A stretch of 64,000 nt of DNA from Entomortierella parvispora E1425 (lineage: Eukaryota > Fungi > Mortierellomycota). The position numbers were made by a program, and so were the translations under genes. This document shows positions 39,319-46,847 of this stretch, piece by piece. A model generated the notes under the pieces. It made no database searches and was not told the DNA's origin. It saw only the letters and a list, made by a program, of their open reading frames with translations. How positions within the stretch are numbered: the stretch's first letter is position 1; the number at the start of each line of letters is the position of its first letter. The stretch is from NCBI GenBank assembly GCA_020891255.1, contig BQFW01000006.1, forward strand, positions 992,001-1,056,000, written 5' to 3'.

Positions 39319-41288
39319 TGAACTAGAAAGTGAAGTGATGTCTCTGGTGTAAGGTACTCAATAGCTGGAGGGTGACTAGGATATCAGAGAAGATGACTGC
39401 GAGCAGAGCTAAAGCCAGGGGTGGGGCTGTAAACAAGAGCTGTAGCTGGTGGTGATGAGGGAGCGGGTAGTGCTGAGCGGGTGGGGGAAGTATTTGTAGA
39501 AGCTCTTTGTTTGTACACTCTAGAAGCATTGATGTTAGGAGACTTATCCACCGTTGACCAAGAGCGTAACAACTGCCACGAAAAATGGCCAATTATAGGC
39601 ATGTGGCATGGAACAAGAAAAAAGAGAAATGGACAGCGATGGAGTAAGGTGTCTTTATAGAGACCACAGTGGAACAACCCAACCACACGTCGTTACTTCG
39701 AGCCTCAACTCGGCTACAGACTGGTAGACTTCGTAGAATGGCCAGCCGATCGACAGTGGTGTCGGCTGTTGTGCATGCTCTTTCCTTGTTCATAAGACGA
39801 CGTTACACCTGCGATTCGGAAAATGGTGACTATTGAATAAAGGGAAGGACATTGGTCACGCGATGATAGAGTTGATAAACCATTGTATCACGACGCCCTC
39901 TGCAACCTCGTCTACTTCTCCACAACTGACCCAGACCAGCCAGATCCGGGAATACAACGACGAGATATAAAAGGACATTGCAGCAGCAAGTAAATGCATC
40001 TTTACGAGAACTCGCCGAGACCCCTGGCCCTCCTCCTGCAGTTGATTTTTTTTTTCTTTTTTTTTTGAGCAACCTCGGCTACTTTCGACTGAGAGACGTA
40101 AGAGTCTAGCCCAATATCTTTTGGGTCTTTGAATGCCAATTGTCTCTTTTCGAGTCAACAACTCGTGGGTCAGGACTCAATTGGTCTTGTGAAAGATGAC
40201 TCAAGGGTGAACGTACATGTAAGAAGCACCTCAAGTGCTGTTGTCGTTCATGAACACCCGCAGCAAGGGGATCAAATCATGCCCCATCCAATTCTCTTGA
40301 CTGTTCGACATGAGACTCTTGTTCGAACACATGCAAAATGAAAAGAAGCCCTTCCTTGTGAAAATCCAGGGGGAGGGGAGATTGCACGTGGTAGCTGCAG
40401 AACGGGACATCGTTGCATGAAGTTGGAACGAGGGACAGCAAACAACACGGACGACAACTCGCTGTCTTTGAGTAAATTGCATGAACACTGCAGCAGCTGC
40501 GTTGGGCACTTGATGAACCTCAAACCTTTCGCCTGTCGGGGTCACTCACTGTCCTGCGGTCTGTCTTTGTGCGTCTGCCATGTGGCGAACGCAACAAAAC
40601 CAAAAACTGGTCTAAATGAGCCCATGTGGCCAAGGACCGACCCCTTACAAAAAAAAAAAAAAAAAAAAAAAAAATCAGTCAGCCCTTTGAATCGTGTTGA
40701 GTCATCGGTCCGGGACTGGTCCAACATGCAGGCACCGTGCATTTCTCTCTTTTTTTTTTTTGTTCCCTTGCATTCCACGATCTGCATCAACCCAATTGTT
40801 TTTGTGTTACCCTATGACGCGCACTCCCTGCTCAAGAGGCCATGGACGTCGTCTCTGGATCGGGGTCACCGGAATGAACAGGCCCTTACTAATGCCTGTG
40901 TCACGCTCACAACAATCGTTGACTCTTCAAAATCGGACGCGCTCATGGGACGCGCCACAACCCGCGTCCCCTTCCCCACATAAAAAGGATGACCTCGATT
41001 CTGTTTCTTCCTTCCTTCTTTACTCGTCACTGCTTCACTCAAACCATTTTCAGACTTTCATCATCCTTGGTCCCTTCTTTTCATGCCTTTACCCACGATC
41101 GTAACACAGAGAGGTACAAACCAGCGAACCCTCGGAGAGACGAATATCCTGACATGCCCCCCCCCCTTTACTGATATGACCATTCCTCTCGATGGCTCTC
41201 TGTGTATAGAACCCTTCGTCTGCTAGGCTAAACAGCCCTCAAACCTGGATATCCATTCCATTTACCAAACAAAGACAACAACGCCATC

Positions 41289-43080
41289 ATGCTGAGAAAC
41301 GCAAACGGCTACTTCGAGTTCCGACCCTTGACTTTACCCAAGGCTATTCCCATGTTCCTTGGCAAAGGGTTCCAAACCATCGAACGACATGTGGACGAGG
41401 GACTCGAGAACGAAACCGAGGAGACCTTGCACCGTCGAATCAAAGCTGACATCGTTCAGTTGTGCCAAGAACGTGGTCTACCCTCCGAGGGCGAGAAGAG
41501 TGCGCTCATTCGCAACTTGTTAGGCTGGGTAAGAAGTCATGACAGACAAAAAAAGCATCGTATCGTTCTTGTTTATCCATTCTAGATACCAACTTTGAGT
41601 TAACCTTTCTATCGTCTCTGCACAATAGCAAAAGGCCAAGCCGGTACCTGGGCCATCAACGCCTCAACTCTGCTCTCTAGAGCCTATGGTAGTCTCCAAG
41701 AAAGCTCCCATCAACACCCGCTATCTCAACTCAATTCTTGCCGATGTGGACTTTCATGGCGAGATTTCGTACGACCAGTTGACAGTGGGTAGGAAACTTG
41801 GATCTGGCGGATTCAAGGATTGCTATGCAGGCACCTTCAAAGGGGTAAGACTACAGAAATTACCATCACTTCAGAATCCCTCCTTTTCTTTCTTTTTGTT
41901 GGTCTAGTTGGCTGATATGCAGGGAAAAAAACATGTGCTGTGATAATAGGAAGAGGTAGCAATCGGTGAACTTCGGATCCAAAACTTTTCTGAGTTGGAC
42001 GTAAAAGAGATGAAGCACGAGATCAACGTCCTGAAGTAAGTGTGTGCGGGTAGCAAGAGGTTATTCAGGTTGGATGCTGTGGGACTAAGGGAAGATACAT
42101 CGTCAACCCACTATTGTCACTCACAACTGATATTTGACTTTGTTTAGACAACTTCGACACGAGAGCATCATCCGGTTCATTGGGGTCTGTACGAATGTAC
42201 GTCATCTCTGTATTGTTACTGAACTTTGCGCGAACGGAGACCTCTATGACCACATGCGCAAGGTCCGGAAGCCATCTTTTGGTCGAATGGTAACAATTCT
42301 CATTCTCAAGACTGTTTCACGAAGTCCACTATGTTCAATATATGGATCCTAACCCGCGAGAAATTGTGTTTGCAGATCATGATCATGCATGACATTGCAA
42401 TGGGCTGTTCTTATCTCCACGCTCGAAGGCCAAGCATCATTCACAGGGTAAGTTGGAAGCTACGTGGTATCACGCACCCATGTCGAAAGATCTCAGTTCT
42501 TTGACTAACGGATTTTTTTTTTTTTTTTTTTTGGATGTCCTCAGGACATGAAATCGATGAATGTTTTGATCACCTCTGACGAGAGAGCCAAGATCAACGA
42601 CTTTGGGCTTGCACGCATCCGCCCAAGAGCCAATGCTTCTCTCCATACCCAATGCGGCACCCCCAATTGGCAAGGTAAGATTCCATAAGAGATCAATACG
42701 TGCAAGGGAAATTGCAGAACTGAGCAATGGAGTCCAACTCTTGCTCACGTATATAAAACTCCCTCTCTCTTCAACTTACATCAGCGCCCGAATTCTGGAC
42801 ACCGAATCCAAGTTATACCGAAAAGGTGGACGTGTATGCCTGTGGATTGATCTTTTGGGAGATCTTGTCCTGGGCTGAGCTCGGATACCCCTACCACAAC
42901 TTGACCGAGCACCAACTATACGAGGCTGTCAGAGACAAGGAAGTTCGCCCGCCTCTGGAGAAGCTGCGAAAGTATCCACCTTCACTCTTGGCCTTAATCC
43001 AAGACATGTGGCGCAAGGATCCTAAGAAGCGACCCTCCATGTTCTATGTTGTCGATCGACTGGCAGATTACCTTCAGTAA
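41289..43080 (+). CDS. Protein kinase (TKL-like catalytic core) with N-terminal SAP domain and WNK-type lysine placement; 7 exons
   Basis: SAP-like LHRRIKADIVQLCQERGLPSEGEKSALIRNLL; GSGGFKDCY; VAIGEL; HEINVLKQLRHESIIRFIG; HR|DMKSMN; DFGLAR; CGTPNWQ|APE; KVDVYACGLIFWEI; KRPS. All six introns are GT-AG. Confidence 0.93.
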
Positions 43081-43585
43081 TCAGAAAATGAGGAGGCAGG
43101 GACTCCCGTTTCAATTCTTAATTTTTCATTTGACAAAGATGCCCTCTGCTCATTCCTCATTCTCCACTCTGCCCTCACCCTCTTCACTTTATTTTTTGGA
43201 CAAACCCTTCTCAAGGACTTTCCGACAGACATCTTTATATCCCCTACATAGAAACAATGAAAAAGTCCTCCCAAAAACATGCCCTTTCTTTATACCAGTT
43301 CTAGCACCCCAAAAAAAAATAAAAAAATAAAAAAAACCTCCCCTTTGATAATATGGCACCAAGAAAGTTGAGGTTTACAAGCTTGCCCGCATGGCCCTAT
43401 TTGGATTGTTTGAGCCCAATGCTCACTCGGTATCTTAAAAAGAACTCTGCGGCCCATTCCTCAAAAAAAAAAACATGAAGTCCGACTGATGGCGCAGTGT
43501 TGAAGATTCCTCGCCCTGGAAAGAACAAAAAAAATGTTGTTACTCGACAAAGTTTTATTTTTTTTTCTGCATGAGACGATGACTT

Positions 43586-44342
43586 TCAGCCGCGGCAAGC
43601 GCTCAGACAGGATCTCCAAGTGCTAGCACAGCTGTTGAGACAGGGGTTACTGGATTGGCACTGGCCAGTGCAGATGGTGACCGCACGCTGATCTCCGGTG
43701 CAAGTACTGAGGCAGCTCTTTAAAGCAGCATCATTGTTATGACAAGTATCTTGGCAAGAGTCAAGAGCGCTGCCACAGTCGACATTGCATTGGAAACCAC
43801 CCGAACCAGTCGTTGGTGCAGGATTTGGAGCAGCCGTGATAGTGGTGGTGGTGGTGGTGGTGGTGGTGGTGGTAGGAGAAGCAATGGTGGAAGTAACATA
43901 CGCCTGGGAGGGAGGGGACAGGTATCCCGTAAAAGTAGTGGTAGGAAAAGCCCCTTTTGACTGGATTGTGTTGGTGCTTGTAGAGCCAGGGCTTCCGGCA
44001 GAAGGCACACCGCCACCACCTGTGATGCCCTTACTCCCTGAACCTTCTGAGGAGTTCTTGTTCCAGACAGTGCCGCCGAGGACGCCGAGAACAATGGCCA
44101 AAACGAGAACGAGAACAATATAGAATTCCTTTTTGCGATAGTCACGCACGTTGAACAAAAAAGTACCAAAGGTGTACCGACCATGGCTATAGCTGTTGTT
44201 GTCCATTGGCTCGCAAGGGATAAAAGTGACCTCCCCGTTCTTGTAGGGCGTTGTTGAGGTTGCTGGGGAAACCTGAACGATCGTGGTTGCACTGCTGTTG
44301 CCCGCACCTGGGACGGGGTAAGCTCTCAGCTGCTGCTGCTGC

Positions 44343-44378
<36 letters not shown>

Positions 44379-44417
44379 CGTTGTTGATGTTGTTGTAGTT
44401 GTTGCATCTGTTGCACC

Positions 44418-44458
<41 letters not shown>

Positions 44459-44884
44459 CCGTTGCCGTTCGTATTGCAAGTAGAGGTTTTGTTGTTGCTC
44501 CAGCTGCCGTTGCTCTTCCAATTGCAACTGCCGATTGTACTCTTCTTCATATGTCAGTCCTTCATAATTGGGCAAATTCTCCTGCTCTTCAACTACTTGG
44601 CCCGCCGGAGCTCGAGAGGAGTGGGACGAAGCCTCGGTCGAGGTTGATACAAGTGGTGAAAATGTGGATTGATGCGAGTTCTCAGTTTGATTGGAGTGAG
44701 GGTTTGTCGGCGCTATATTGTGAGGTGAGATGGCTGCAGGGGGTGGGGGCACATAGTCGTGAATGTGTTGCGGTGACCTCAGCAATGTTGCCTGGTCGCC
44801 CTGAGGCGATGCTTGTGGAGGCACAGTCAAAGATGAGCCTTCATCCAAAGTTTTTTGAGGTAGGTTACTGTCAGTGATCGTCAT
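43586..44884 (-). CDS. Single-pass (predicted type II) membrane protein: poly-Q N-terminus, TM, S/T stalk, 12-Cys C-terminal domain
   Basis: Start MTITDSN at 44884 in ORF 43586..45058. TM FYIVLVLVLAIVLGVLGGTVW is preceded by RKK; the C-terminus has six Cx3C units. Confidence 0.85.
44331..44470. repeat. (CAG/CAA)n poly-glutamine coding repeat
   Basis: Trinucleotide runs (tgc/tgt on + strand) encoding Q tracts on the minus strand. Confidence 0.9.
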
Positions 44885-46847
44885 GATATACAAGATGGGT
44901 GTGGCCAAAGGAAGGGTTCGTGAATCAATTTTTTGTCGCTTTTCTTTTCGTTGAGGATAATGAAGGAGCAGGAGAGGACCGATGATGCTGCCGGAGGGTA
45001 AGGTAGGGTGAGATGGACAAGAGAGACGAAGAGGGAAAAGAAGGGAAGAGAGCCACAAAAAGAAAAAAAAAAAAAAAAAAAAAAGGGTAAAAGGACGTTT
45101 TCAAAACCCAGATATATATGAGAGAGCCCGAGTGCATCTTCCTCCGGGCGAACGATCGCCAGCCTCGTCAATCTCGGTTTCGCAGCCATGTCGTTGCACT
45201 CTCAAATACACAGCCCAAAGTCGAGTGGCGCCCACCATGTAAACGATAAGAAATTGCCTGTAGACGGAACTTTCTTTCTCTCACGCGACCATACTTGTGT
45301 CTCTCTGCTCTTCCCCTCTCTTCTCTGTCAAGGATTACCCGCGCGTTGGAAATGGAGAAGAGTCATCCATCTCTAGTCTTTCCTCCTCAGAATATTGAAG
45401 GCGTCTCCTCCATGATGTGTGTGACTCTCCATCGCGGCACTCTGGATTGATCAGCCGTGGCATCTGTCAGTTGTGGATTCTTTTTTTTTTCGACGTGCCA
45501 TAAACACAGACGCCAATATAGAATTTACTGCAATGGTGTGAAAGCGGAGAGGTGCGGCGCGATCCGAAGGCTGCCAGTATTTCACCCGACTGGCTTCCAG
45601 TTTTTGGAGAAATATAATGAGCTCTACGACTGTCTCGTCGAGCCCAGGTGCCATGTATCCACGTATCCTTGGACAGTGGTAGAGACAGATGGAGGAAGCG
45701 CGATTTAACCTGAAGCTACAAATTGATGGCGGCCCGGGCTTTCGAAGGACCATGGATATGTAACCTGACCTCCTCTTCCAACCACTCGATATTTTCAAGC
45801 CACCTGTCGATGACTTTCGTGGACTATAGCAGTACTGCAATATGTTTATTGTGCTCGTATATAATAAAACCATTGTTTTTACCATAAACTAGGGGATAGG
45901 GATAAGAGTGTGAGGCTGGTGCATTGTTCTGTTGTTGCTATTTAGAGTGTAATGGGAAAGCTCAAGGGAAAAGCGCGAACGATGTTTATTGGTATGAAGT
46001 ATGGGGTATTTATACTAAAGGTTGTGCAAGTGAAGTGTTGTTTGAGGTGGTGGTAATGATGGCAATAATCGCGGTGATTGTACTTGACCATTTGTTTGTG
46101 GCTTTGCTGTGAACGAAGGCACTGCATGGTACGAGACCTACTTCAAAAAAAAAAAAAAAAAAAAAAAAAAAAGCAGGAGCGAAGAAATCAATCAAAGGCA
46201 CCAGACAACCAAATAAGCTAAGGGCAGGAGAAATAAGGGCAAGGGCAAAGTAACGGGTTAGCATAGAGGAAAGACCTGTGCGACTGATGCAGTGGATAGG
46301 GTACAAAGAGAAAGGAGTCTCCATTGTGGGCTTGCACAGGAGCGTGTCACATCATTTCTTTCATGGTCCCGAAAAAGGTCTAGGACAAAAACCAATTCAG
46401 CGGAGCACAGGAACGAGAACTTTCTAAACTCTCGGTCTGCTTAACGTACTTTGTCAAACGTACACACACGTGGATTCAGCTGTCAATGTATGGAGAATAA
46501 AACGTCAAGGTGGTACATGGAACAGTTGTGTGTTTGAACGTTTAATGAGGGAATTCTGAATAAAAATCCAAGCTCTTGTCTGAGCCACATGTAGGGAGGG
46601 GCATGCACATCGGGAGAGATTTTAATCATCCAGATAGATGACGGTGCAGTATGTCAACCGTCCCCTGGAAGAACATCTGCCTTAGCCATGCTTTCGCCTC
46701 TTGATTTACAATGTTGCTTTCGATGGCGCTGTTGTCATATTTTCATTGACCCGAGGAAATTTGACCGCTCACTCGACTCCGGTATAAAGTGCCGGTTTGT
46801 GAAAGAAAGCGCTGTGTCGTAGTTGGCCATGACGATAAAACCTGAGA

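What the first reader, a model, noticed from the sequence alone, without database searches (positions are those of the whole stretch)
41791..42035. WNK-type lysine relocation in a fungal TKL-like kinase
Seen: after splicing (AAAGGG|GTAAGA...TAG|GAAGAG) the N-lobe reads LGSGGFKDCYAGTFKG-EEVAIGELRIQNF. The canonical beta-3 lysine (VAIK) is Gly (GGT, 41965-41967), and a Lys sits in the Gly-rich loop (AAG, 41815-41817). Established: WNK kinases use this arrangement (GRGSFKTVY...VAWCEL), and yeasts lack WNKs. Seen: the alpha-C Glu, HRDxKxxN, DFG and APE motifs are intact, and the C-lobe (KVDVYACGLIFWEI) looks TKL/MLK-like rather than WNK-like. Inference: an active kinase that reached the WNK solution convergently, or a deep fungal WNK-like lineage, rather than a pseudokinase.
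Basis: partly seen in the sequence, partly recalled or inferred. Interest (0 to 1): 0.8.

Follow-up and report, generated by a model that had tools for sequence, protein, structure and literature searches.

The report
Fungal TKL-like kinase with WNK-style lysine
A conserved fungal protein kinase has moved its ATP-anchoring lysine from its usual strand into the glycine-rich loop, at the same position as in human WNK kinases; it appears to have done so independently, and I found no paper describing this.

Summary
A 7-exon gene (41289-43080, +) encodes a 393-aa protein identical to EMPS_04348 of Entomortierella parvispora. It has an N-terminal SAP-like domain and a kinase domain.

- **The two residues.** The glycine-rich loop reads GSGGFK (Lys143, AAG 41815-41817). 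Strand beta-3 reads VAIG (Gly158, GGT 41965-41967).
- **Splice.** The exon 2/3 junction is seen in a spliced contig from a related strain. VAIG lies inside exon 3, so no alternative acceptor could restore a lysine.
- **Conservation.** The arrangement defines a monophyletic family: 291 of 291 family domains have the loop Lys with a small non-Lys beta-3 residue, against 0 of 122 non-family domains. HRD, the catalytic-loop Lys and Asn, DFG and APE are essentially invariant.
- **Range.** Mucoro-, Mortierello-, Glomero- and Zoopagomycota, aphelids, and all three basidiomycete subphyla.
- **Alignment to WNK.** Against natural WNKs, Lys143 aligns with the WNK loop Lys and Gly158 with the WNK Cys.
- **Nearest relatives.** By sequence and by fold these are Raf-like/MLK TKLs (CTR1, DLK, BRAF). 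WNKs score only at generic inter-family level.
- **Unresolved.** Topology tests cannot reject a WNK sister relationship.

Best reading: an active TKL-like kinase that reached the WNK solution convergently. Activity is inferred, not shown. I found no paper on this family.

The parts
41289..43080 (+). Whole coding region (ATG to TAA) of the SAP + kinase gene. Seven exons, 393 aa, identical to EMPS_04348 of Entomortierella parvispora.
   Evidence: model, all GT-AG; 100% identity to P0172 over 393 aa.
41289..41528 (+). Exon 1 (residues 1-80). It holds the SAP-like helix-loop-helix, residues 44-82, from about 41418.
   Evidence: Pfam SAP scores 16.6-18.8 bits here, below the 23.9 cut-off. 20 of 62 family members hit SAP, best E 7e-8. 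In the AF2 model, helices 52-61 and 70-82 have pLDDT 93-96. Of the 29 strain differences listed in this exon, 22 are at third codon positions.
41629..41844 (+). Exon 2 (residues 81-152): linker, strand beta-1, the glycine-rich loop and strand beta-2.
   Evidence: BRAF alignment.
41815..41817 (+). AAG = Lys143. It sits at the position of the third Gly of GxGxxG, at the start of beta-2, and is the proposed catalytic lysine.
   Evidence: Invariant in 291 of 291 family domains and in alignment A1. Aligns with the loop Lys of a natural WNK. Beta-2 starts at residue 143 in the AF2 model.
41950..42035 (+). Exon 3 (residues 153-181): strand beta-3 (EEVAIGELR) and helix alpha-C.
   Evidence: Both flanking junctions are seen in the spliced X10 contig.
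41965..41967 (+). GGT = Gly158, in place of the canonical beta-3 (VAIK) lysine.
   Evidence: Aligned to the Lys of CTR1 VAVK and EGFR VAIK and to the Cys of WNK VAWCEL. The family has G/A/S/C here and never K.
42019..42021 (+). GAG = Glu176, the alpha-C glutamate.
   Evidence: Present in at least 90% of the rows of alignment A1.
42148..42289 (+). Exon 4 (beta-4, beta-5, hinge, alpha-D).
   Evidence: Pfam PF07714 hit.
42376..42447 (+). Exon 5 (alpha-E). It ends with the His-Arg of HRD (42442-42447).
   Evidence: His251 is invariant.
42545..42674 (+). Exon 6: Asp253 (42545-42547), Lys255, Asn258, DFG (42599-42607) and the activation segment.
   Evidence: D253, K255, N258, D271, F272 and G273 are invariant in A1.
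42785..43080 (+). Exon 7: APE (Glu298 at 42790-42792) and the C-lobe, with the TK/TKL-type MW(x)6RPSM motif, then the stop codon.
   Evidence: Pfam PF07714 scores above PF00069 on this exon. The motif definition comes from PMC3937382.

Best explanation
The gene encodes a catalytically competent Ser/Thr kinase of the tyrosine-kinase-like (TKL) kind, closest to Raf-like and MLK kinases, with an N-terminal SAP domain. The lysine that normally sits in strand beta-3, binds the ATP phosphates and pairs with the alpha-C glutamate has been replaced by a small residue: Gly here, and Ala, Ser or Cys in relatives. Its job is proposed to be done by Lys143. This residue occupies the third-glycine position of the glycine-rich loop at the start of beta-2 and would reach into the active site across the small beta-3 residue, as Lys233 does in WNK1. 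The arrangement arose once, before aphelids and fungi split, and has been kept in a mostly single-copy family ever since. It most likely arose independently of WNK. The SAP domain suggests the kinase acts on or near DNA or chromatin.

Shown: the gene model, the residue positions, their conservation, family monophyly, and the nearest relatives. Inferred: catalytic activity, the role of Lys143, convergence with WNK, and a nuclear role.
For: Gene model and splice.

Position equivalence: the loop Lys aligns to the third Gly of BRAF and CK1. Gly158 aligns to the beta-3 Lys of CTR1 and EGFR. Both align to the WNK Lys and Cys in BLASTP against a natural WNK, whose identity was confirmed at 445 bits to WNK3 and WNK1 chains.

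Conservation:
- 291 of 291 family domains have the arrangement, against 0 of 122 others.
- G140, K143, H251, D253, K255, N258, D271-F272-G273 and E298 are invariant, and E176 and A156 at least 90% conserved, in 62 rows sharing down to 34% identity with the window protein.

Monophyly: SH-aLRT 98-100.

Range: zygomycete phyla, Basidiobolus, Paraphelidium, Amoeboaphelidium, Agaricomycetes, Malassezia, Violaceomyces, Tilletiopsis and Rhodotorula.

Expression: P0003 comes from an intron-free 1369-nt contig, and the X10 contig is spliced.

TKL affinity:
- PDB sequence hits (ortholog P0003 as query) are CTR1 161 bits, DLK 142 and BRAF 130, with no WNK in the top 60.
- Foldseek's top hit is CTR1 (TM 0.90, rmsd 2.0), with no WNK in the top 50.
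- phmmer scores are 116-176 bits for most sampled canonical TKL domains (eight of eleven checked; three score 59-104) against 87-98 for WNKs.
- WNK itself scores 102 bits to CTR1 and 104 to PAK1, so it has no special affinity to this family.
- Source annotations read 'TKL' or 'TKL-ccin'.

Literature: WNK1 Lys233 on beta-2 replaces the beta-3 Lys and is required for activity (PMC4718504, PMC10211241).
Against: - No biochemical data exist for any family member.
- No coordinates were available from the AF2 model, so the reach of Lys143 to the ATP site and to Glu176 was not measured.
- TKL membership is not clear-cut on Pfam profiles. PF07714 minus PF00069 is about 0 for the family, against +19 to +37 for canonical TKLs and -43 to -51 for WNKs.
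- Convergence is not proven. Trees that force the family together with WNK are only 2 lnL units worse (p-AU 0.45). N-lobe columns prefer that grouping by about 9 units, while C-lobe columns prefer the TKL grouping by about 11.
- No STE, NEK or NRBP kinases were in the tree.
Confidence: 0.68

Rival explanations
1. It is a pseudokinase. Loss of the beta-3 lysine abolished catalysis, and the protein works as a scaffold or allosteric partner. On this view the loop Lys is conserved for a non-catalytic reason such as nucleotide binding without transfer.
For: By the formal definition (lack of the VAIK Lys) it counts as a predicted pseudokinase (PMC4718504). No activity data exist. One divergent agaricomycete paralog (Flagelloscypha, P0140 and P0396) has HLD and a degenerate loop, so some copies can decay.
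Against: Every other catalytic residue (HRD Asp, catalytic-loop Lys and Asn, DFG, alpha-C Glu, APE, the VAI Ala, the first two loop glycines) is invariant or nearly so over a family reaching from aphelids to mushrooms. The beta-3 replacement is always small (G/A/S/C), as expected if a side chain must pass over it, and the loop Lys is 291 of 291. WNK and POMK, with the same layout, are active (PMC10211241).
Confidence: 0.17
2. The family is a deep, highly diverged branch of the WNK lineage. The lysine relocation would then be inherited from a common ancestor with WNK rather than convergent.
For: The Lys and the small beta-3 residue are at identical positions, followed by E-L in both (VAIGEL against VAWCEL). 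Without an outgroup, WNK attaches to the family's stem. A constrained family+WNK tree is not rejected. N-lobe columns favour it by about 9 lnL units.
Against: - WNKs score no better against the family (87-98 bits) than against CTR1, PAK1 or NEK7 (about 100-105 bits), while the family scores 130-176 bits with TKLs.
- WNK signatures are absent. The family has HRDxKSxN, not HRDLKCDN; DFG, not DLG; GTxNWQAPE, not GTPEFMAPE; and no domain after the kinase.
- The C-lobe carries the TK/TKL W(x)6RP motif.
- The best tree found and the free search both put WNK outside TKL plus family.
- No WNK appears among the 50 nearest folds.
Confidence: 0.12
3. It is a gene-model or assembly artefact, and the true transcript encodes a normal VAIK.
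For: No RNA run of the window's own strain was listed.
Against: VAIG lies inside exon 3. The junction is seen in a spliced contig of a related strain. The model equals the deposited protein. More than 290 homologous kinase domains, several from intron-free transcript contigs, read the same.
Confidence: 0.01

Closest known systems
WNK kinases (WNK1 to WNK4; 'with no lysine')
   Same: The catalytic Lys sits at the third-Gly position of the glycine-rich loop, at the start of beta-2 (GRGSFK against GSGGFK). The beta-3 residue is small and non-Lys (Cys against Gly/Ala/Ser/Cys) and is followed by E-L. All other catalytic motifs are kept.
   Different: The family has DFG, not the chloride-binding DLG; HRDxKSxN, not HRDLKCDN; a TK/TKL-type P+1 loop and subdomain XI; and no C-terminal WNK domains, but an N-terminal SAP domain instead. 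Sequence similarity to WNK is only generic (87-98 bits). The family is restricted to fungi and aphelids.
POMK / SGK196
   Same: This is the second published case in which the missing VAIK lysine is supplied from beta-2 and is needed for activity (PMC10211241).
   Different: POMK also relocated its HRD and DFG equivalents, and it is a secretory-pathway sugar kinase. The fungal family keeps canonical HRD and DFG and looks like a cytosolic or nuclear protein kinase.
Raf-like and MLK TKL kinases (plant CTR1/EDR1, DLK/MAP3K12, BRAF)
   Same: These are the best sequence and fold matches (34% identity to CTR1 in the Foldseek alignment; P0003 scores 161 bits to CTR1 by phmmer; TM 0.90). They share LHxRxPxIIHRDLKSxN, W in the P+1 loop, and W(x)6RP in subdomain XI.
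   Different: They have the canonical GxGxxG and VAxK, and different regulatory domains. Pfam profile preference for the family is neutral rather than TKL-typical.
FslK, the fungi-specific TK-related lineage (PMC3937382), and the Kinbase catch-all 'TKL-ccin'
   Same: Both are fungal TKL-type kinases retained in Agaricomycetes and lost from ascomycetes according to that paper. The Coprinopsis ortholog is labelled TKL/TKL-ccin.
   Different: FslK is described as a multi-copy expansion. Members are mostly without extra domains, have conserved ATP-binding residues, and were found only in Agaricomycetes and Chytridiomycota. The family here has few copies per genome in the hit lists (not counted systematically), carries SAP, lacks the beta-3 Lys, and is abundant in zygomycete phyla.

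Membership tests
WNK kinase family | Catalytic Lys in the glycine-rich loop / beta-2, with a non-Lys residue in beta-3 | tested here: met
   Lys143 and Gly158 align with the Lys and Cys of natural WNK L029. The pattern is conserved in 291 of 291 family domains.
WNK kinase family | Highest sequence similarity to WNKs, and WNK signature motifs (HRDLKCDN, DLG, GTPEFMAPE) | tested here: not met
   WNKs score 87-98 bits against 116-176 for most sampled canonical TKL domains. There is no WNK in the top 60 PDB sequence hits or the top 50 folds. The motifs here are HRDMKSMN, DFG and GTPNWQAPE; the WNK forms are.
WNK kinase family | Phylogenetic grouping with WNKs | tested here: inconclusive
   lnL is -25114.1 for family+TKL and -25116.3 for family+WNK; p-AU 0.52 against 0.45. 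No STE, NEK or NRBP sequences were available.
WNK kinase family | Chloride-binding pocket built on the Leu residues of DLG | tested here: not met
   DFG is invariant in the family. The DLG role is taken from PMC5346417. This was tested at sequence level only.
WNK kinase family | Regulatory domains C-terminal to the kinase domain | tested here: not met
   The protein ends about 5 residues after the kinase domain, and Pfam finds only SAP plus kinase.
TKL group (Raf-like/MLK neighbourhood) | Nearest characterised relatives are TKLs | tested here: met
   CTR1, DLK and BRAF lead the sequence hits. CTR1, Roco4, TNNI3K and BRAF, with Src-family TKs, lead the fold hits. Atlas neighbours are RIPK2, Mos and STY46-like clusters by features, and STY46-like, EDR1/CTR1-type and TNNI3K clusters by the structure of the first hit.
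TKL group (Raf-like/MLK neighbourhood) | TK/TKL subdomain XI motif CW(x)6RPxF | tested here: met
   The window reads MWRKDPKKRPSM, that is W(x)6RPSM with C to M and F to M. W371, R378 and P379 are at least 90% conserved. The motif is as defined in PMC3937382.
TKL group (Raf-like/MLK neighbourhood) | Pfam PK_Tyr_Ser-Thr (PF07714) scores clearly above Pkinase (PF00069) | tested here: inconclusive
   The family differs by +1.6, +1, +3.7, -5 and -5 bits; canonical TKLs by +19 and +37; WNKs by -43 and -51.
TKL group (Raf-like/MLK neighbourhood) | Nested within or sister to canonical TKLs in a rooted tree | tested here: inconclusive
   A quick tree rooted on bacterial kinases nests it among TKLs. 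The best tree found and the free search keep WNK outside, but the alternative is not rejected.
Pseudokinase (formal definition) | Lacks at least one of the VAIK Lys, the HRD Asp or the DFG Asp | tested here: met
   The beta-3 Lys is absent (Gly158). The HRD and DFG aspartates are present and invariant. WNK shows that meeting the formal definition does not show inactivity (PMC4718504).
SAP-domain proteins | A roughly 35-residue helix-extended-helix SAP motif | tested here: inconclusive
   The window protein scores 16.6-18.8 bits, below the 23.9 cut-off. 20 of 62 relatives hit SAP, best E 7e-8. The two helices are modelled at pLDDT above 90.

The most novel reading that the evidence does not exclude
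This would be a third, independent invention of the beta-2 catalytic lysine, after WNK and POMK, and the first inside the TKL group. It would be fixed for the whole history of Fungi in a SAP-tethered, probably nuclear kinase. In the boldest form, the cavity left at beta-3 makes the enzyme anion- or crowding-sensitive like WNK, giving Dikarya, which were not seen here to have WNKs, an analogous sensor. Its unusual ATP pocket would also be a selective target in Mucorales and Malassezia.
Probability: 0.1. Interest if true: 0.85.

Novelty: new variant of a known kind. Interest (0 to 1): 0.62.

Why it matters
**Kinase mechanism.** Relocation of the catalytic lysine is regarded as a rare peculiarity of WNK, and more recently of POMK. 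An independently evolved, ancient and widely conserved case in another kinase group would show that the solution is reachable repeatedly. It would also give a natural experiment on what the relocation is for: WNK's chloride sensing has been tied to it.

**Annotation.** Motif-based surveys would label this whole family as pseudokinases, probably wrongly.

**Fungal biology.** This is a conserved, uncharacterised SAP-domain kinase. It is present in Mucorales, arbuscular mycorrhizal fungi, mushrooms, Malassezia and Rhodotorula, and was not seen among the ascomycete-free hit lists here.

**Pharmacology.** WNK's odd pocket has allowed highly selective inhibitors (PMC5346417). The same logic could apply here.

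Tried and rejected
- **RNA-seq of the window's strain.** None was listed. I used same-label runs at 85% likeness instead.
- **Searching PDB with the glycine-loop peptide alone, to see if WNK comes up.** It does not; CK1 delta and BRAF do.
- **FslK (PMC3937382) as the same family.** Rejected: its distribution, copy number, lack of extra domains and conserved ATP-binding residues are all different.
- **Apparent 'N-K' and 'T-K' states at beta-3 and beta-3+1 in some basidiomycetes.** These looked like a retained lysine. They are an alignment shift caused by a 5-residue insertion before VAIA.
- **First rooted quick tree (WNK outside, family nested in TKLs).** I do not rely on it. A constrained search found a tree 33 lnL units better, which showed the quick search was poor. 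Equal-effort searches then gave a statistical tie.
- **Technical losses.** One IQ-TREE batch timed out, and background runs were killed between calls.
- **The Kwon et al. 2019 pseudokinase survey.** It could not be read because it is not held. I therefore cannot say whether it lists this family.
- **Chloride sensing.** No sequence support was found.
- **The AF2 model.** It gave no coordinates, so the ATP site could not be measured.
Full report
**Observation.** Reading 41000-43500 and testing splice sites gives a seven-exon gene on the + strand: 41289-41528, 41629-41844, 41950-42035, 42148-42289, 42376-42447, 42545-42674 and 42785-43080. Every intron is GT-AG, and the CDS is an open 1182 nt encoding 393 aa.

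The product is letter-for-letter identical to database protein P0172, 'hypothetical protein EMPS_04348 [Entomortierella parvispora]'. The window is therefore from a filamentous mortierellomycete, not a yeast.

AAG 41815-41817 encodes Lys143 in LGSGGFKDCYAG. GGT 41965-41967 encodes Gly158 in EEVAIGELR. Glu176 (alpha-C), HRDMKSMN, DFG and APE are all present.

**Is the splice real?** No RNA run was listed for this strain. Four runs with the same species label were laid at 85% likeness.
- One 146-nt contig of X10 covers 41949-42035 and continues at 42148-42171. It skips exactly the predicted intron 3, with GT..AG ends.
- Its 29 unaligned letters upstream of 41949 encode ...K-D-C-Y-A-G-T-Y-K-G, joined directly to E-E-V-A-I-G.
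- Contigs of X4 (same sample as X10) and X9 carry intron-sized, unalignable sequence at these places.
- The X10 contig is therefore a spliced form of the ortholog in a diverged strain.

VAIG lies 15 nt inside exon 3, so no alternative acceptor could create VAIK. Of the 29 strain differences listed in exon 1, 22 fall on third codon positions, which indicates purifying selection. Ortholog P0003 comes from a 1369-nt contig with an uninterrupted 389-codon ORF, that is, a transcript.

**Position equivalence.** phmmer against PDB aligns GSGGFK with GSGSFG of BRAF and CK1 delta. VAIG aligns with VAVK of CTR1 and VAIKELR of EGFR (shown there for the ortholog P0003).

To compare with real WNKs without typing sequences from memory, I scanned metagenome contigs for the degenerate WNK loop motif. 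This recovered 50 loci reading GRGSFKTVYKG...VAWCEL. Five have intron-free kinase domains. One of them, L029, scores 445 bits to WNK3 and WNK1 chains. BLASTP of P0172 against it aligns Lys143 with the WNK loop Lys and Gly158 with the WNK Cys.

The AF2 model (mean pLDDT 84.7; kinase domain mostly above 90) starts beta-2 at residue 143. The literature states that WNK1 Lys233 on beta-2 substitutes for the beta-3 lysine and is essential, and that POMK does the same (PMC4718504, PMC10211241).

**A conserved family.** An exhaustive search with the last exon and three word-index searches recovered several hundred relatives. Mapping all kinase domains onto a family HMM gave these results:
- 291 domains have the loop Lys together with a non-Lys beta-3 residue. 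The tally is G 118, A 115, S 45, C 5, plus eight N, T or V calls; the N and T calls, and at least one V call, are alignment shifts before a true Ala or Ser.
- 0 of 122 non-family domains have this combination, and one has both lysines.
- In 62 rows sharing down to 34% identity with the window protein, G140, K143, H251, D253, K255, N258, D271, F272, G273 and E298 are invariant. E176, A156 and the W(x)6RP motif are at least 90% conserved.
- An acidic residue follows the loop Lys (D in 284 of 291). Another follows the beta-3 position (E or D in 263 of 291).
- The loop-Lys sequences form one clade, with SH-aLRT 98 to 100. The only other rows inside it are N-terminally truncated fragments.

**Range.** Named members come from:
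- Mucoromycota, Mortierellomycota, Glomeromycota, Kickxello-, Zoopago- and Entomophthoromycotina, Basidiobolus, Calcarisporiella and Endogone;
- the aphelids Paraphelidium and Amoeboaphelidium;
- Agaricomycetes, where the proteins are about 1000 aa and the Coprinopsis copy is labelled TKL/TKL-ccin;
- Malassezia, Violaceomyces, Tilletiopsis, Pseudomicrostroma and Rhodotorula.

No ascomycete appeared. However, the lists are capped at 120 rows, so absence is not shown.

A SAP domain precedes the kinase. It is sub-threshold in the window protein, significant in 20 of 62 relatives, and confidently modelled as two helices.

**What kind of kinase?**
- By sequence (ortholog P0003 as query), the best solved relatives are CTR1 (161 bits), DLK/MAP3K12 (142) and BRAF (130), then ABL. 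No WNK is among the 60 listed of 2294 hits.
- By fold, CTR1 is first (TM 0.90, rmsd 2.0 Å, 34% identity). It is followed by Src-family kinases, Roco4, TNNI3K and BRAF, with no WNK in the top 50.
- Language-model neighbours are RIPK2, Mos and STY46-like clusters; the structure search run from the first of these hits lists STY46-like, EDR1/CTR1-type and TNNI3K clusters.
- Local phmmer gives 116-176 bits for most sampled canonical TKL domains (eight of eleven checked; three score 59-104) and 87-98 for WNKs.
- The natural WNK scores 105 to NEK7, 104 to PAK1 and 102 to CTR1. WNK is therefore no closer to this family than to kinases in general.
- The motifs agree: HRDxKSxN, GTxNWQAPE and W(x)6RPSM are TK/TKL-like, and the WNK forms (HRDLKCDN, DLG, GTPEFMAPE) are absent.
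- Against a clean TKL call, the two Pfam kinase profiles score equally for the family. Canonical TKLs prefer PF07714 by 19-37 bits, and WNKs prefer PF00069 by 43-51 bits.

**Convergent or inherited?** Trees with the family, canonical TKL domains, four WNKs and bacterial kinases as outgroup (fetched) were ambiguous.
- Without an outgroup, WNK joins the family's stem.
- A rooted quick tree puts WNK outside TKL plus family.
- A constrained family+WNK search then found a tree 33 lnL units better, which exposed the weak search.
- With equal search effort, the two trait columns removed and LG+F+G4, the likelihoods were: free -25115.5, family+TKL -25114.1, family+WNK -25116.3. The p-AU values were 0.49, 0.52 and 0.45.
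- Site likelihoods split by lobe. The 80 N-lobe columns prefer family+WNK by about 9 units. The 186 C-lobe columns prefer family+TKL by about 11 units.

That split is what convergence of the ATP-binding lobe on a TKL chassis would produce, but the effect is small. I therefore favour convergence on the similarity and motif evidence, at about 0.8 of the weight between the two readings, and treat the tree as undecided.

**Mechanism proposed.** Lys143, at the start of beta-2, reaches over the small beta-3 residue to bind the ATP phosphates and Glu176. The rest of the catalytic cycle is canonical. This is inference from position, conservation and the WNK and POMK precedents.

Chloride regulation has no support. 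The WNK site is built on the leucines of DLG (PMC5346417), and this family has an invariant DFG. The SAP domain suggests DNA or chromatin association.

**Known or new?** Searches for WNK-type lysines in fungi, TKL-ccin, fungal pseudokinases, SAP kinases and early-diverging fungal kinomes found nothing on this family (papers read). FslK is a different lineage. One survey, Kwon et al. 2019, could not be read.

The gene itself is annotated only as a hypothetical protein, 'kinase-like' or 'TKL'. I class the finding as a new variant of a known kind, of moderate to high interest, pending an activity assay.

Noticed in passing
L052:1501-2292: A contig of an uncultured proteobacterial MAG (2.4 Mb) encodes a eukaryote-like canonical TKL kinase. 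It matches the query at 30% identity (E 3e-38) and a eukaryotic TKL domain at 42%, and it falls among eukaryotic TKLs in the tree rather than with bacterial Hanks kinases. This could be gene transfer or bin contamination.
   Followed up: partly
P0001 (1715 aa), P0005 (2911 aa), P0006, P0030: These database proteins have 5-9 kinase-domain matches each. Some of the domains lack the beta-3 Lys or loop glycines. They may be tandem TKL arrays or fused gene models; their organisms were not looked up.
   Followed up: no
P0140 / P0396 (Flagelloscypha sp.): These are divergent extra copies of the family with HLD in place of HRD and a degenerate loop (GAGASK). They look like a decaying paralog inside an otherwise strictly conserved family.
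   Followed up: partly
window 41200-43200 against runs X4, X9 and X10: Runs carrying the same species label hold this gene with roughly 10-15% nucleotide differences in exons, and with introns too different to align. The species label therefore covers deeply diverged lineages.
   Followed up: no
window 42504-42540: Intron 5 of the kinase gene contains a T run of about 24 nt. The read tool skipped it as a repeat.
   Followed up: no
window 43586-45058 (-): The neighbouring 490-aa open frame has long poly-Gln runs, a Thr-rich stretch and a Cys-rich C-terminus. It converges on the kinase gene's 3' end. It was not analysed.
   Followed up: no
L023, L028, L040: Some natural WNK-like sequences from metagenomes read VAWLEL instead of VAWCEL. 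The beta-3 replacement therefore varies within WNKs too.
   Followed up: no
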